Virus record (IMG/VR): IMGVR_UViG_3300020186_000013
Coordinates: 1 to 64,000 of that record
DNA length: 64,000 nt
Reading direction: 5' to 3' (one strand)
The notes under the pieces are model-generated. The model had not been told where the DNA came from, made no database searches, and saw only the letters and a list, made by a program, of their open reading frames with translations. Each line of letters begins with the position of its first letter. Positions within the stretch are counted from its first letter, which is position 1. The translations under genes were made by a program, and so were the position numbers. Shown in pieces: positions 41,601 through 47,416 of the stretch.

Positions 41601-41679
41601 GACTCCTCTAGTGTGAACGCGAAGGCCACCCAGATCTGGGTGGCCTTCGCGTATTGAGTAGGGCGGTCCGTCAAGCACG

Positions 41680-44206: not shown

Positions 44207-47200
44207 ATGTCTACCTCCAAAAAGTTGACGATCGCGGAACAGCTGAAGATCAAGAAGAAGAAACAGCAGTCGGCGTTCCTCCAGACGGCGTCCCTCTCCA
44301 AGAAGGAGATGGGCCTGACGGGCTTCGAGGACGAGTGGACCAAGCGACTGATCATTGCCCAGCACTACCTGAAGAAGAGTAACGTCGCCAGCCTGCGGCC
44401 CATCTTGCCCGCCCTCCTCCAGCTCAAGGGCAAGCCGTACCACCTCAACGATCACTTCCCGTTCGAGCCCTTCTTCCGCACCCGCATGCCCTACATGACC
44501 CTCCTCAAGACGGGCCGGCAGGTGTCGAAGTCGACGAGTCTCTCGTCCCAGGGCATCATCTTTAGCAACGCCATCCCGTACTTCTCGACGCTGTACGTCA
44601 CACCGCTGTACGAGATGATCCGGCGGTTCAGCCACAACTACGTCCGGCAGTTCATCGAGACGTCGCCCGTGAAGCGACTGTTCATGAACTCCAAGACGAT
44701 CAACTCCGTCCTCCAGCGGTCGTTCCGCAACGGTTCGACCATGTACTTCAGCTTCGCGTACCTCGACGCCGAGCGTACCCGAGGTATCCCCGCCGACAAA
44801 GTTGTCATTGACGAGAGCGTAAGACTCGGTACAATGATCAGTACCCACACCGGCTCACGCCCGATCGAGACGTTCTCGCCCGGCGACGCGGTCCTGGGGT
44901 TCGACGAGGCTGGTCATGTCCGAAAAGATGAAGTCGTCAAGTGCTCCGACCACGGGGTCCGCGACTGCTACAGGTTCGAGTTCTCCGGCGGGTCGGCGGT
45001 CGAAGCTACTAGCGATTCTTGGCTCGCCACCACCGCCGGATGGAAACGGGTCGAAGCTGTCATCACTGACCTCAGCACAAGAGCAGATGATGCTGGGTTC
45101 GATGTTGGGCGACGGGTATCTGCGGAACACCGGCAAGCATTCGGCGTTCACGAGTCGTCACGGCTGGAAGCAGCACGCCTACAACTGCCGAAAGTTCCAG
45201 GTGTTATCCGAGTTCGTACGCACGCCTCCCAGGAAAGTGAAGAACTACGGCTACGGCGAGTGGTCGAGTCTGTGGCAGACTCGACAATCGGAGGCTTTGC
45301 AGGATATCGCTTCCTTGTGTCTCCGGGACGGCAAGAAGCGTGTGACGTCGGAGTGGCTCGACAGGATGACGTGGGAAGCGGTCGCGTGGTGGTACATGGA
45401 CGACGGCTCGCTCCAACTGCGGACGGCCGTGTTCAACACGCAGGGTTTCACGTCGGCGGAAGTGAAACTCCTGGCGAACTGGTTGACGGTTCGCGGGGTG
45501 GACGCGAAAGCCGCGAGAATCACGTCGCGGCACAACCCGACTGCGAGCTACTGGATCGTGCGACTGTCGGTCGACTCGACGCGTACGCTGGCGGCACTGA
45601 TCCGACCGTACGTGTTCCCGGAGATGACTTACAAACTGGACCTGCCTGCGAAGGCCGAGGCCCTGACCTGTCACTGGTGCTCGAAGGCGTTCGTTCCGGC
45701 TACGAACGGGCAACGGGTGTACGGCACGGGCGAGCAGAAACCGTGCTGCCGCTCGTCAACGTGCAAGGCCGAGCGGCACAAAGAACTCAACGAAACGCTG
45801 ATGGCGAAACCCGGCAAGCGGGGCGAGAAGAACGCCAAGCAGCGGGAGGGCTATGCGACGGACTTGGATACCCGTCGCAAGTACGAGCGGGAGAAGGCAG
45901 CACGCCTGTACGCGAAGAACCGGGAGAAGAGACTGGCGTACAAGAGGGCGTGGCGTGCCTCCAAGAAGTCGATCTCGTCCGGGTGACGTGGACGGGTAAG
46001 CACCGCGTTTTCGATCTCGAAACCAAAAACCACAACACGTTCCTGGCCGGCGGCGTCGCGGTACACAACTGCCAGGAGATGAACTACGACTTCTTGTCGA
46101 TCATCCACGAGACCTTGTCGGGCTCCCCGTTCGGCCTCAAGCAGTACGCGGGCACGCCCAAGTCGCTTGAGAACACGATCGAGAAGCTGTGGACCGACAG
46201 CAGCCAGGCCGAGTTCGCCATCAAGTGCCACCACGGTGGGTGCAACTACTGGAACGTCCCCGCCCTGTCCCACGACCTCGTGAAGATGATCGGGCCATGG
46301 CACTCGGGCATCTCCGAGCAGTGCCCCGGTATCGTCTGTGCCAAGTGTCGCAAGCCGATCGACCCTCGCCGCAACGGCCGGTGGATTCACGCCCAGCCCA
46401 ACGTGCGGTGGTCATTCGCCGGTTACCACATCCCGCAGATCATCATGCCGATGCACTACGCCACCCCCAAGAAGTGGGACATGCTGGTCGGCAAGATGCA
46501 GGGGCGGGGCAACACGCCCATGAACGTCTTCTTCAACGAGGTGTGCGGCGAGAGCTACGACGTGGGGTCGAAGCTGGTGACGGTCACGGAGCTTCAGGCG
46601 GCAGCCTGCCTGCCGTGGGAGAACAAGATCGAGCAGGCCGAGAAGCACCTGGACCAGTACCTGTACAAGATCCTGGCGGTCGACTGGGGTGGGGGTGGCG
46701 GCAAGCTGCGGAACTCGGCTGCCAAGCCCGGCAGCGAGCAGCGGGAGCGGACGAGCTACACCGTCCTGGTGGTCATGGGCATGCGGCCCGACGGGAAGAT
46801 CGACGTGATCTGGGGCCTCCGGTCGCTGCGGACGCACGCCCACGTCCACGAGGCCGAGCTGTGCATCGCCGCCATCCAGCGGTTCAAGTGCAGTCACTTC
46901 GTGCACGACTTCAATGGGGCGGGGGCGATCCGTGAGACCTTGGTGCGTCAGGCGGGCTTCCCGATGGGCAATATCATCCCGATCGCGTACCACGCCTCGG
47001 CCAAGAAAAACATCATGGTACACAAGCCGCCGACCGACGACCTGCCGCGTGACTGGTGGACGGTCGACAAGAGCCGATCGCTCCAGCTCACGTGTGAGTT
47101 GATCAAGTCCGGCCAGCTGCGGTTCTTCAAGGACGACTACCGCAGCTCCGACGACGCCGGGCTGATCCGTGACTTCCTGGCACTCATTGAGGAGAAGACG

Positions 47201-47416
47201 GAGAGGCCATCCGGCGGCGACGTGTACTGCATTACCCGCAACCCGACCGCCTCGGACGACTTCGCCCAGGGGGTCAACATCGGGTGTTGTGCGTTGTTCC
47301 AGTTGAGCGGTCAGTGGCCCGACGTGGCGGCGGCGAACCACCTGATCCTGCCGCTCGACGTCCTGTCCCATGTCCACCCGCAGCACCAGCCGGACTGGGA
47401 CGACGCGGGGAGCTAG
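44207..47416 (+). CDS. terminase large subunit (GpA-like), intein-containing
   Basis: LKTGRQVSKST Walker A, RGIPADKVVIDE|CQE Walker B after splicing, AGTPK, Zn site C..C/CAKCRK, nuclease LAVDWGGGG, DDFAQ. Confidence 0.85.
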   Translation: MSTSKKLTIAEQLKIKKKKQQSAFLQTASLSKKEMGLTGFEDEWTKRLIIAQHYLKKSNVASLRPILPALLQLKGKPYHLNDHFPFEPFFRTRMPYMTLLKTGRQVSKSTSLSSQGIIFSNAIPYFSTLYVTPLYEMIRRFSHNYVRQFIETSPVKRLFMNSKTINSVLQRSFRNGSTMYFSFAYLDAERTRGIPADKVVIDESVRLGTMISTHTGSRPIETFSPGDAVLGFDEAGHVRKDEVVKCSDHGVRDCYRFEFSGGSAVEATSDSWLATTAGWKRVEAVITDLSTRADDAGFDVGRRVSAEHRQAFGVHESSRLEAARLQLPKVPGVIRVRTHASQESEELRLRRVVESVADSTIGGFAGYRFLVSPGRQEACDVGVARQDDVGSGRVVVHGRRLAPTADGRVQHAGFHVGGSETPGELVDGSRGGRESRENHVAAQPDCELLDRATVGRLDAYAGGTDPTVRVPGDDLQTGPACEGRGPDLSLVLEGVRSGYERATGVRHGRAETVLPLVNVQGRAAQRTQRNADGETRQAGREERQAAGGLCDGLGYPSQVRAGEGSTPVREEPGEETGVQEGVACLQEVDLVRVTWTGKHRVFDLETKNHNTFLAGGVAVHNCQEMNYDFLSIIHETLSGSPFGLKQYAGTPKSLENTIEKLWTDSSQAEFAIKCHHGGCNYWNVPALSHDLVKMIGPWHSGISEQCPGIVCAKCRKPIDPRRNGRWIHAQPNVRWSFAGYHIPQIIMPMHYATPKKWDMLVGKMQGRGNTPMNVFFNEVCGESYDVGSKLVTVTELQAAACLPWENKIEQAEKHLDQYLYKILAVDWGGGGGKLRNSAAKPGSEQRERTSYTVLVVMGMRPDGKIDVIWGLRSLRTHAHVHEAELCIAAIQRFKCSHFVHDFNGAGAIRETLVRQAGFPMGNIIPIAYHASAKKNIMVHKPPTDDLPRDWWTVDKSRSLQLTCELIKSGQLRFFKDDYRSSDDAGLIRDFLALIEEKTERPSGGDVYCITRNPTASDDFAQGVNIGCCALFQLSGQWPDVAAANHLILPLDVLSHVHPQHQPDWDDAGS
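44816..46069 (+). mobile_element. intein (418 aa) in terminase Walker B
   Basis: Starts SVRLGTMIST..G.RPIE, ends VFDLETKNHNTFLAGGVAVHN, +1 Cys. Confidence 0.88.
45087..45986 (+). CDS. LAGLIDADG homing endonuclease encoded in +1 frame inside the intein
   Basis: MMLGSMLGDGYL and AVAWWYMDDGSL, FNTQGFT, LIRPYV...MTYKL, C-terminal CHWC/CCRS..C and basic tail; frame open from 44916. Confidence 0.85.
   Translation: MMLGSMLGDGYLRNTGKHSAFTSRHGWKQHAYNCRKFQVLSEFVRTPPRKVKNYGYGEWSSLWQTRQSEALQDIASLCLRDGKKRVTSEWLDRMTWEAVAWWYMDDGSLQLRTAVFNTQGFTSAEVKLLANWLTVRGVDAKAARITSRHNPTASYWIVRLSVDSTRTLAALIRPYVFPEMTYKLDLPAKAEALTCHWCSKAFVPATNGQRVYGTGEQKPCCRSSTCKAERHKELNETLMAKPGKRGEKNAKQREGYATDLDTRRKYEREKAARLYAKNREKRLAYKRAWRASKKSISSG

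What the first reader, a model, noticed from the sequence alone, without database searches (positions are those of the whole stretch)
44816..46069. Terminase intein whose homing endonuclease is hidden in the +1 reading frame (dual-coding ~900 nt)
Seen: the terminase ORF has intein splicing ends (S-VRLGT... and ...VAVHN|C) inserted in Walker B (VIDE|CQE). In that frame the ~300-aa interior looks non-protein-like. The +1 frame over the same DNA (ATG 45087 to TGA 45986, open from 44916) encodes a clean two-motif LAGLIDADG nuclease (LGSMLGDG; WWYMDDG) with a Cys cluster and basic tail and its own stop just before the C-terminal splicing block. Established: intein endonucleases are normally in frame. 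Inference: both frames are maintained. The intein removes a junk linker so terminase still works, while the nuclease is made as a separate protein (internal start or +1 shift). This would be an intein sheltering an overprinted, free-standing homing gene.
Basis: partly seen in the sequence, partly recalled or inferred. Interest (0 to 1): 0.92.

Follow-up and report, generated by a model that had tools for sequence, protein, structure and literature searches.

The report
Terminase intein with out-of-frame homing nuclease
A large phage's DNA-packaging gene carries a self-removing protein insert whose middle 900 bases also encode, one base out of step, a complete DNA-cutting "homing" enzyme; this is real and kept by selection, but it is a new example of a rare arrangement already described, not a new kind of element.

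Summary
The terminase large-subunit ORF (44207-47416) carries a 418-codon intein (44816-46069) exactly at Walker B (..VIDE|C..).

- **Frames.** Only the two ends of the intein, the splicing domain, are protein-like in the terminase frame. The ~890-nt interior encodes an I-SceI-like LAGLIDADG nuclease with a Cys cluster and a basic tail in the +1 frame (ORF 44916-45986).
- **Not an artefact.** A second assembly, which differs by 7 SNPs over 11.3 kb, is identical here. About 15 diverged terminase lineages all have the nuclease at +1.
- **Selection.** In each lineage the terminase frame has 0 stops where 5-15 are expected (P<=0.0012 each). The third frame has the expected number.
- **Splicing signal.** Every intein-bearing allele checked has Cys at +1. 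All 27 intein-free alleles have V, I or T.
- **Most likely mechanism.** The terminase precursor is read through a disordered linker and spliced. The nuclease is made separately and drives homing.
- **Novelty.** Inteins with alternate-frame nucleases are published: the cyanobacterial DnaX intein and actinophage inteins. The DnaX nuclease is a homologue (33-35% identity) and sits at the same DE|C site.

Verdict: a real new member of a known, rare kind, of moderate interest.

The parts
44207..44815 (+). Terminase large subunit, N-extein (203 aa), ending in Walker B ..VVIDE
   Evidence: Contiguous with the C-extein in 27 intein-less homologues. GC3 is 0.91.
44816..46069 (+). Intein, 418 codons in the terminase frame (Ser1 ... 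His-Asn, followed by Cys+1)
   Evidence: Precise insertion relative to empty alleles.
44816..45083 (+). N-terminal splicing (Hint) subdomain, terminase frame
   Evidence: AF2 pLDDT is 80-92 for residues 1-89. Foldseek matches mini-intein splicing domains at rmsd about 2 A. 62-69% identical to L032, L033, L038 and L055.
45084..45970 (+). Dual-coding interior: a stop-free but structureless linker in the terminase frame
   Evidence: AF2 pLDDT is about 30 for residues 90-385. 47% of residues are G/A/R/P/S. 0 stops against 6.7 expected. Third-position GC is 0.49.
44916..45986 (+). Homing endonuclease ORF in the +1 frame (356 aa from ATG 44916; 299 aa if from ATG 45087; TGA at 45984-45986)
   Evidence: GC3 is 0.82. 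AF2 pLDDT is 90.8. Foldseek matches I-WcaI and I-SceI at TM 0.74.
45084..45551 (+). LAGLIDADG_2 core (two motifs: LGDG, WWYMDDG), +1 frame
   Evidence: Pfam PF03161, E=8e-22, residues 57-212 of the ORF. The motif residues D21, D117 and D118 are invariant or nearly invariant in 19 homologues.
45669..45764 (+). Cys cluster (CxxC ... CC..xxC), probably a zinc ribbon, +1 frame
   Evidence: C207, C210 and C238 are invariant and C233 nearly so in alignment A3.
45765..45983 (+). Basic helical C-terminal tail of the nuclease, +1 frame
   Evidence: AF2 predicts helices at 236-310 with pLDDT 82-94. Conserved in most homologues.
45971..46069 (+). C-terminal splicing subdomain (blocks F and G: ..RVFDLET..HNTFLAGGVAVHN), terminase frame. 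It overlaps the last ~15 nt of the nuclease ORF.
   Evidence: AF2 pLDDT is about 80-84 for residues 386-418. Alignment A2.
46070..47416 (+). Terminase large subunit, C-extein, starting with the Cys+1 nucleophile
   Evidence: tblastn matches annotated terminase large subunits of cultured phages, 22-27% identity, E down to 4e-23. Cys+1 occurs only in intein-bearing alleles.
44808..44835 (+). Sigma-70-like promoter motif (TTGACG, 16 nt, TACAAT) on the intein's 5' junction: a candidate internal promoter for the nuclease
   Evidence: It is the only such site in 3.6 kb, where 0.4 are expected. The same position carries the motif in L032 and L040, and weakly in L038. L035 and L037 have a motif nearby. 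It is built from codons that are rare in the exteins. This is a consensus match only.
44906..44909 (+). Shine-Dalgarno-like GAGG, 6 nt before ATG 44916
   Evidence: SD-like 4-mers precede 21 of 41 window genes, against 9% background. ATG 45087 has none.

Best explanation
This is a non-canonical intein. A class-1-type protein-splicing domain sits at the Walker B motif of a phage terminase large subunit. The loop between its N- and C-terminal halves is occupied by a homing-endonuclease gene of the free-standing, I-SceI-like type, read in the +1 frame.

Shown:
- the precise insertion;
- the Hint fold at both ends of the intein;
- a complete, conserved LAGLIDADG nuclease in +1;
- protein-level selection on the nuclease frame only;
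- strong selection against stop codons in the terminase frame, in every lineage examined.

Inferred:
1. Ribosomes read the terminase frame through ~295 codons of disordered linker. The intein then splices itself and the linker out, leaving an active terminase with Cys at the junction.
2. The nuclease is made as a separate protein. The most likely start is ATG 44916, which has an SD-like GAGG and is the first ATG downstream of a promoter-like site on the intein's 5' junction. ATG 45087 is the alternative.
3. During co-infection the nuclease cuts intein-less terminase alleles at the DNA that encodes Walker B. Repair then copies intein and nuclease in together (homing).
For: - **Insertion and +1 residue.** The insertion is precise, and Cys+1 is found only in intein-bearing alleles: all 9 checked, against V, I or T in 27 empty alleles.
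- **Splicing domain.** The Hint fold is predicted with confidence only for residues 1-89 and 386-418, and matches solved mini-inteins.
- **Nuclease.** PF03161 at E=8e-22. AF2 pLDDT 90.8, with I-WcaI and I-SceI as best structural matches. Motif Asp residues and zinc-cluster Cys residues are invariant in 19 homologues.
- **Coding frame of the interior.** GC3 and the codon-position substitution pattern mark +1 as the coding frame. Amino-acid identity is 0.33-0.54 in the nuclease frame against 0.17-0.36 in the terminase frame.
- **Stop purging.** The terminase frame has 0 stops against 5.3-14.9 expected in 15 lineages, P<=0.0012 each. The third frame is at expectation. The test is calibrated.
- **Independent assembly.** A second assembly has 7 SNPs and no indel over 11.3 kb.
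- **Horizontal spread.** Distribution is patchy, and intein identity is decoupled from extein identity. L038 has exteins 25-31% identical but Hint-N 67% and nuclease 52%. L035 has exteins 44-52% identical but Hint-N 35% and nuclease 38%.
- **Decay stage.** L009 has a TAG inside the nuclease, yet its terminase frame is still open. This is the expected decay stage of the homing cycle.
- **Published parallel.** The same architecture is described for the DnaX intein and for actinophage inteins.
Against: - No experiment or read-level data was available. Splicing, nuclease expression and cleavage are all untested.
- Block B lacks the usual His (T-S-D-S instead of TxxH) in most lineages, so the splicing chemistry may be atypical.
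- The start codon is not settled. ATG follows Q-E-Q in most lineages but not all, and upstream starts vary.
- The +1 frame over Hint-N shows no depletion of stops.
- The promoter and SD sites are consensus matches, and the host is unknown.
- Deep relationships among the nuclease lineages are unresolved.
Confidence: 0.82

Rival explanations
1. Sequencing or assembly artefact: two compensating indels hide an ordinary in-frame intein nuclease.
For: Metagenome assembly; no reads were available.
Against: A second assembly with 7 SNPs has no indel here. About 15 diverged lineages from unrelated samples all have the same +1 offset. A stop-free terminase frame (P<=0.0012 per lineage) would be unnecessary if the nuclease were in frame. 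The nuclease has its own stop codon in every lineage.
Confidence: 0.01
2. Programmed ribosomal frameshifting (+1 after Hint-N, -1 before Hint-C) produces a canonical intein with an in-frame nuclease domain.
For: The +1 frame stays open for 46-93 codons upstream of the nuclease domain in most lineages. The L-T-x-x-Q-E-Q segment is conserved at the junction.
Against: The upstream openness is no more than expected. Two efficient shifts would be needed. The nuclease ends in a stop in all lineages, in some of them well before Hint-C and in L037 after most of it. Selection against stops in the terminase frame across the whole interior shows that this frame is read. I did not search for a shared slippery motif.
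Confidence: 0.03
3. The nuclease ORF of this phage is a silent relic. The intein persists only as a splicing element with a tolerated junk loop, and no homing occurs.
For: L009 and the dnaX locus L068 carry broken nuclease ORFs while the host frame stays open. No strong ribosome-binding site precedes ATG 45087.
Against: The window's ORF is intact over 356 codons, with all invariant catalytic and zinc-binding residues. GC3 is 0.82. Substitutions concentrate at third positions. The intein and extein histories are incongruent.
Confidence: 0.1
4. The insert, or its interior, is a group I intron carrying a LAGLIDADG ORF and is removed at the RNA level.
For: PF03161 nucleases are typically intron-encoded. 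A distant relative (L043) sits in a 23S rRNA group I intron.
Against: A permissive Rfam scan of 44500-46400 finds no intron. There is no non-coding room: the nuclease ORF abuts both Hint halves. RNA removal would not require a stop-free host frame.
Confidence: 0.01
5. A fractured gene with a split intein: two terminase halves are made separately and trans-spliced, with a free-standing nuclease gene between them.
For: Gene callers in several loci called the C-terminal part as a separate gene. The arrangement resembles the fractured genes cited.
Against: There is no stop in the terminase frame in any lineage, and that absence is significant.
Confidence: 0.02

Closest known systems
Cyanobacterial DnaX (DNA pol III gamma/tau) non-canonical intein with a LAGLIDADG nuclease in an overlapping ORF (Gorbalenya 1998 as cited; Phillips, DeSimone and Gogarten, bioRxiv 10.64898/2026.09.14.751524)
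   Same: - The splicing domain is in the host frame, the in-frame linker is disordered, and an I-WcaI/I-SceI-like LAGLIDADG nuclease sits in an alternate sense-strand frame.
- The two dnaX loci I fetched (L067, L068) carry a nuclease 33-35% identical to the window's, with the host frame stop-free.
- The intein sits at the same motif, Walker B ..VIDE|C...HN|CH.
   Different: - The host gene is dnaX rather than terminase, in bacteria rather than a phage.
- The nuclease is in +2 rather than +1.
- The DnaX nuclease has an N-terminal Cys-rich extension instead of the C-terminal Cys cluster and basic tail.
Actinobacteriophage non-canonical inteins (Gosselin, Arsenault and Gogarten, bioRxiv 10.1101/2025.01.02.630785)
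   Same: These are phage inteins, many of them in the terminase large subunit. Their nuclease is encoded in a separate frame or strand between the splicing blocks. The authors interpret this as invasion of an intein by a free-standing nuclease gene.
   Different: The sense-strand out-of-frame case reported there is an endonuclease VII-like enzyme in frame 3. LAGLIDADG is reported there only on the antisense strand. A sense +1 LAGLIDADG_2 nuclease is not listed, and no uncultivated large phages are covered.
ShiLan out-of-frame HNH insertion in a mycobacteriophage methylase (Arsenault et al. 2025, PMC11855218)
   Same: A nuclease ORF is overprinted on a host gene whose own frame stays stop-free, and the same open question arises of how the hidden ORF is translated.
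   Different: That element has no splicing domain, so the insert stays in the host protein. Its nuclease is an HNH enzyme.
Canonical bifunctional inteins (e.g. PI-SceI) and free-standing or intron-encoded I-SceI-family nucleases
   Same: A Hint splicing fold plus a LAGLIDADG nuclease inserted in the same loop. The nuclease fold matches I-SceI and I-WcaI. A distant relative in the RNA-ligase intein of Pseudaeromonas phage KLEP7 is in frame.
   Different: Here the two activities are on separate polypeptides read from overlapping frames. The nuclease belongs to the intron/free-standing family PF03161, and truly free-standing (L065) and 23S-intron (L043) relatives exist.
Fractured genes with split inteins and a free-standing nuclease gene between the halves (Dassa et al. 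2009, as cited)
   Same: [quoted passage not shown]
   Different: The host frame is not interrupted here, so cis-splicing of one precursor is expected.

Membership tests
Intein (class 1, Hint fold) | Precise in-frame insertion relative to intein-less homologues, in a conserved functional motif | tested here: met
   27 homologues have ..IDE directly followed by (V/I/T)Q... The site is Walker B.
Intein (class 1, Hint fold) | N-terminal nucleophile (Cys/Ser1), C-terminal (His-)Asn, and +1 Cys/Ser/Thr | tested here: met
   Ser1, His-Asn418 and Cys+1. Cys+1 is present in every intein-bearing allele checked and absent from all empty ones.
Intein (class 1, Hint fold) | Block B Thr-x-x-His | tested here: not met
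   The window has T-S-D-S. Only L040 keeps the His (T-A-N-H). This is atypical but recurs across the lineage.
Intein (class 1, Hint fold) | Hint fold formed from the N- and C-terminal segments | tested here: met
   AF2 is confident for residues 1-89 and 386-418. Foldseek matches Mtu RecA, Ssp DnaB and Npu DnaB/DnaE inteins. Pfam Hint_2 and Intein_splicing matches are only sub-threshold.
Intein (class 1, Hint fold) | Protein splicing activity | not testable with these tools
   Inferred from the essential host gene, the stop-free frame and Cys+1.
LAGLIDADG_2 / I-SceI-like homing endonuclease | Two LAGLIDADG motifs, each with its acidic residue, and a profile match above the curated threshold | tested here: met
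   PF03161 scores 78.5 bits against a cut-off of 25. LGDG and MDDG are conserved.
LAGLIDADG_2 / I-SceI-like homing endonuclease | Monomeric double alpha-beta-beta-alpha-beta-beta-alpha fold | tested here: met
   AF2 pLDDT is 90.8. I-WcaI (6x1j) and I-SceI (1r7m) match at E about 1e-14, TM 0.74.
LAGLIDADG_2 / I-SceI-like homing endonuclease | Site-specific cleavage of the empty allele | not testable with these tools
   Mobility is inferred from the patchy distribution and from intein/extein incongruence.
Non-canonical intein (nuclease in an alternate frame) | Nuclease ORF nested between the splicing halves in a frame other than the host's, with its own stop | tested here: met
Non-canonical intein (nuclease in an alternate frame) | Host frame kept stop-free across the nuclease ORF beyond chance | tested here: met
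   0 stops against 5.3-14.9 expected in 15 terminase lineages. The same holds for dnaX L067 (P=0.005) and the FoX3 helicase (P=0.03).
Non-canonical intein (nuclease in an alternate frame) | Homology to the nuclease of the described DnaX intein | tested here: met
   L067 and L068 are dnaX genes by Pfam. Their nuclease is 33-35% identical, E 1e-23 to 1e-25.
Group I intron with nuclease ORF | Catalytic intron RNA core | tested here: not met
   A permissive Rfam scan finds none. The positive control L043 scores 76 bits.
Split intein / fractured gene | Host ORF terminated after the N-intein and restarted before the C-intein | tested here: not met
   A single open frame of 1069 codons in the window. 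The homologues have open stretches of 987-1219 codons where the whole gene lies on the contig, and stay open to the contig end in L039 and L040.

The most novel reading that the evidence does not exclude
The out-of-frame state may be a long-lived, selected way of expressing the nuclease rather than a short-lived accident. Under this reading, one intein and nuclease lineage specialised on the DNA that encodes Walker B (..DE|C) has moved among terminase, DnaX clamp-loader and DExH helicase genes. It has always kept the nuclease out of frame: +1 in terminases, +2 in dnaX and in the Xanthomonas phage FoX3 helicase. The nuclease would have its own promoter and start built into the intein's 5' end, so that its expression is uncoupled from the timing and level of the host protein.
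Probability: 0.3. Interest if true: 0.65.

Novelty: new member of a known kind. Interest (0 to 1): 0.5.

Why it matters
How nuclease domains came to live inside inteins is a long-standing puzzle. The favoured answer is that free-standing nuclease genes invaded mini-inteins, and that answer predicts intermediates of exactly this kind.

This family adds three things. It is a widespread set of examples, about 15 diverged lineages of uncultivated phages. It gives clean statistical evidence that the host frame is purged of stops while only the nuclease frame evolves as a protein. It also gives a sequence link between the terminase element, the classic DnaX case and a helicase case, all at Walker B.

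Practically, gene callers split or mis-annotate such terminases. Examples are the separately called fragments and FoX3 gp40, which is annotated only as a helicase.

Tried and rejected
- **Assembly artefact.** Rejected on the second assembly, the many lineages and the stop purging.
- **Group I intron.** Rejected by the Rfam scan.
- **Selection to keep the +1 frame open across Hint-N** (a possible long leader or frameshift window). The observed stops equal the expectation, so there is no signal.
- **Viral scan with a three-row nuclease alignment.** It failed for lack of conserved stretches. It was repeated with a 19-row alignment.
- **Nuclease phylogeny to order the terminase, dnaX, helicase and free-standing forms.** Only the core terminase clade is supported (96/89). 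The deep nodes are unresolved, so I make no claim about the direction of transfer.
- **Cultured phages.** None carries the terminase element. Only distant nuclease relatives were found.
- **dN/dS.** Not attempted, because the available relatives are too diverged (at most 54% amino-acid identity among the fetched loci). Codon-position mismatch counts were used instead.
Full report
**1. Observation**

The window equals the first 64 kb of IMG/VR contig 3300020186_000013, which is 208 kb long, and is 61% G+C. It contains one open frame, 44207-47416 (1069 codons), and a second, 44916-45986 (356 codons), shifted by +1.

The C-terminal 449 residues match annotated terminase large subunits of cultured phages, for example Salmonella phage Arash at 27% identity and E=4e-23.

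Twenty-seven related viral contigs encode the same terminase without any insert. In them..IDE is followed directly by (V/I/T)Q(D/E)M... It begins with Ser, ends His-Asn, and is followed by Cys.

**2. Two frames**

- **Nuclease frame (+1).** Pfam finds LAGLIDADG_2 (PF03161, E=8e-22) only in the +1 frame.
- **Terminase frame.** Only weak Hint and Intein_splicing matches appear, at the two ends of the insert.
- **GC3.** In the interior, GC3 is 0.82 in the +1 frame. The third position of the terminase frame is 0.49 G+C and its first position is 0.82. The exteins have GC3 of 0.91-0.92.
- **Intein structure.** AlphaFold2 on the terminase-frame intein is confident only for residues 1-89 and 386-418 (pLDDT about 80-92). 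Residues 90-385 score about 30. The confident part matches solved mini-intein splicing domains such as Mtu RecA, Ssp DnaB and Npu DnaB, at about 2 A rmsd.
- **Nuclease structure.** The +1 protein folds at pLDDT 90.8. Its best structural matches are I-WcaI and I-SceI, at TM 0.74, 26-27% identity and E about 1e-14. It continues into a Cys cluster and helical basic tail.
- **Linker composition.** The terminase-frame linker is 47% G/A/R/P/S.

**3. Artefact or chance?**

A contig from another sample is identical across the insert and differs by 7 SNPs, with no indel, over 11.3 kb.

I shuffled synonymous codons of the nuclease, which keeps its protein sequence and codon usage. This gives 6.7 expected stops in the terminase frame against 0 observed (P=2e-4). 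The remaining frame has 10 stops against 10.7 expected.

The test is calibrated. In 23 other long ORFs of the window the same offset has 259 stops against 277 expected. None of 419 windows of 299 codons is stop-free.

**4. Relatives**

The nuclease has 18 clear homologues (29-61% identity) in the protein collection, all PF03161. I fetched contexts for seven of them, and ran viral and metagenome scans with the nuclease alignment.

- **Terminase lineages.** This gave about 15 distinct lineages: the window, L009, L032, L033, L035, L037, L038, L039, L040, L047, L050, L055, L059, L061 and L062.
- **Same arrangement everywhere.** In every one, the exteins and both Hint halves share one frame and the nuclease is at +1. 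The terminase frame is open from end to end.
- **Stop purging everywhere.** The terminase frame has 0 stops where 5.3-14.9 are expected, P<=0.0012 in each lineage. The third frame is always at expectation.
- **Selection acts on the nuclease frame.** Nucleotide differences concentrate at the nuclease's third codon positions. Amino-acid identity is 0.33-0.54 in the nuclease frame against 0.17-0.36 in the terminase frame.

So the nuclease frame evolves as a protein. The terminase frame is constrained only to stay open.

**5. Evidence that the intein works and moves**

- **Cys+1.** All intein-bearing alleles checked have Cys at +1. No empty allele does.
- **Incongruence.** Intein similarity is decoupled from extein similarity:

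| Locus | Extein identity to window | Hint-N identity | Nuclease identity |
|---|---|---|---|
| L038 | 25-31% | 67% | 52% |
| L033 | 27-31% | 64% | 48% |
| L035 | 44-52% | 35% | 38% |

- **Empty close relatives.** The closest extein relatives (L024, L005, L006, L008; 56-59% identity) have no intein at this site.
- **Decay stage.** L009 carries a homologous intein 4 residues upstream (..ADQN|C...THN|CYDE..). Its nuclease has a TAG where the window has Trp, yet its terminase frame is still open. This is the decay stage that the homing cycle predicts.

**6. How the nuclease is made (inferred)**

The segment L-T-x-x-Q-E-Q is conserved in the +1 frame but not in the terminase frame. In the model it forms the N-cap and first turns of the first LAGLIDADG helix. 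ATG 45087 lies after this segment, so a start there would truncate the helix.

In the window, the nearest upstream starts are ATG 44916 and ATG 44928. ATG 44916 has GAGG 6 nt upstream. SD-like 4-mers precede 21 of 41 window genes, against 9% background.

The only sigma-70-like site in 3.6 kb (TTGACG, 16 nt, TACAAT) lies on the intein's 5' junction at 44808-44835. The same position carries the motif in L032 and L040, and weakly in L038. L035 and L037 have a motif nearby. It uses codons that are rare in the exteins. I found no ATG between this motif and 44916 (reading), so ATG 44916 would be the first ATG of a transcript started there.

These are consensus matches and the host is unknown. The start remains open. 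The +1 frame over Hint-N shows no depletion of stops.

**7. Rivals**

- **Group I intron.** A permissive Rfam scan finds none. A distant relative of the nuclease in a 23S rRNA intron is detected by the same tool.
- **Split intein.** There is no stop in the host frame.
- **Double frameshifting.** This would not require a stop-free linker.
- **Silent relic.** This is possible for some lineages (L009, L068). It is unlikely for the window's intact, fully conserved ORF.

**8. Comparison with what is known**

Inteins whose nuclease is encoded in another frame or strand are published. Actinophage inteins carry antisense LAGLIDADG, antisense VSR-like and sense frame-3 endonuclease VII-like nucleases, many of them in terminases. 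The cyanobacterial DnaX intein has a LAGLIDADG nuclease in a +2 ORF and a disordered in-frame linker. That paper traces the idea back to Gorbalenya 1998.

My metagenome scan recovered two dnaX loci, L067 and L068, confirmed by Pfam. Their nuclease is 33-35% identical to the window's and lies in the +2 frame, with the host frame stop-free. Their intein sits at ..VIDE|C...HN|CH.., again Walker B.

Xanthomonas phage FoX3 gp40, a DExH helicase, has the same design at ..WDE|C...HN|CHH.., with a related nuclease at +2. It is annotated only as a helicase.

A more distant relative, in the RNA-ligase intein of Pseudaeromonas phage KLEP7, is in frame. A truly free-standing relative also exists, L065.

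The window's element therefore belongs to a known, rare kind, and its nuclease is homologous to that of the DnaX case. What is new:
- the host gene and phage group;
- the +1 offset;
- the C-terminal Cys cluster and basic tail;
- the number of lineages;
- the common Walker-B target across three ATPase families.

I did not find a sense-strand +1 LAGLIDADG nuclease in a terminase intein described in the papers I read.

**9. Verdict**

Novelty: a new member of a known kind. Interest 0.5. It is a clean, widespread and statistically well-supported example that bears on how inteins acquired their nucleases.

Noticed in passing
L006:3945-6335 (also L005): The terminase homologues L006 and L005 lack the Walker-B intein. 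Instead they carry a mini-intein of about 128 aa, with no nuclease, in the P-loop (..GRQVSK|CMDEN...VVSHN|STS..).
   Followed up: partly
L042:1884-4250 (Xanthomonas phage FoX3, MT161383.1 26902-29268): gp40, annotated 'putative DNA helicase', contains an intein at DExH motif II (..WDE|C...HN|CHH..). A related LAGLIDADG_2 ORF (L042:2315-3073) lies in the +2 frame. The host frame has 0 stops against 2.5 expected (P=0.03). The annotation does not mention the intein or the nuclease.
   Followed up: partly
L067:2003-4657 and L068:747-2531: These are dnaX genes with the known non-canonical intein, inserted at Walker B VIDE|C. The nuclease is on the same strand in the +2 frame. One paper describes the DnaX case as antisense, and another as a +2 ORF. 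The nuclease of L068 is interrupted by a stop.
   Followed up: partly
L009:4513-4515: An in-frame TAG replaces the conserved Trp just before the second LAGLIDADG motif, so this nuclease is decaying. The intein sits 4 residues upstream of the usual site, and the terminase frame is still open.
   Followed up: yes
L035:3266-5002: This lineage's intein ends in Leu-Gln instead of His-Asn. Its nuclease carries about 170 extra C-terminal residues with repeated CxxC...CxxC modules, and the terminase frame stays open over all 454 codons. L039 and L040 end in Ser-Asn.
   Followed up: no
window 45005-45019 and alignment A2 columns 73-78: Block B of the intein lacks the usual His (T-S-D-S-W in the window, L033 and L038). 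Only L040 has T-A-N-H. This suggests atypical catalysis of the first splicing step.
   Followed up: no
L037:3447-4775: In this lineage the nuclease ORF runs on through almost the whole C-terminal splicing block and stops only 11 nt before the intein's last base. Dual coding therefore extends over Hint-C.
   Followed up: no
L034:1-2058: The neighbouring ribonucleotide reductase gene carries a conventional intein (precomputed Pfam: Intein_splicing, faint LAGLIDADG_3). Both intein styles may therefore coexist in one phage genome.
   Followed up: no
window 41617-41652: A 36-nt stretch matches its own reverse complement perfectly. It appeared as a self-hit in the BLAST comparison.
   Followed up: no
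L043:404-1347: A distant relative of the nuclease core (32% identity, no Cys cluster or tail) is encoded in a group I intron of a bacterial 23S rRNA gene. L065:90-1589 is a free-standing relative with basic repeats at both ends.
   Followed up: partly
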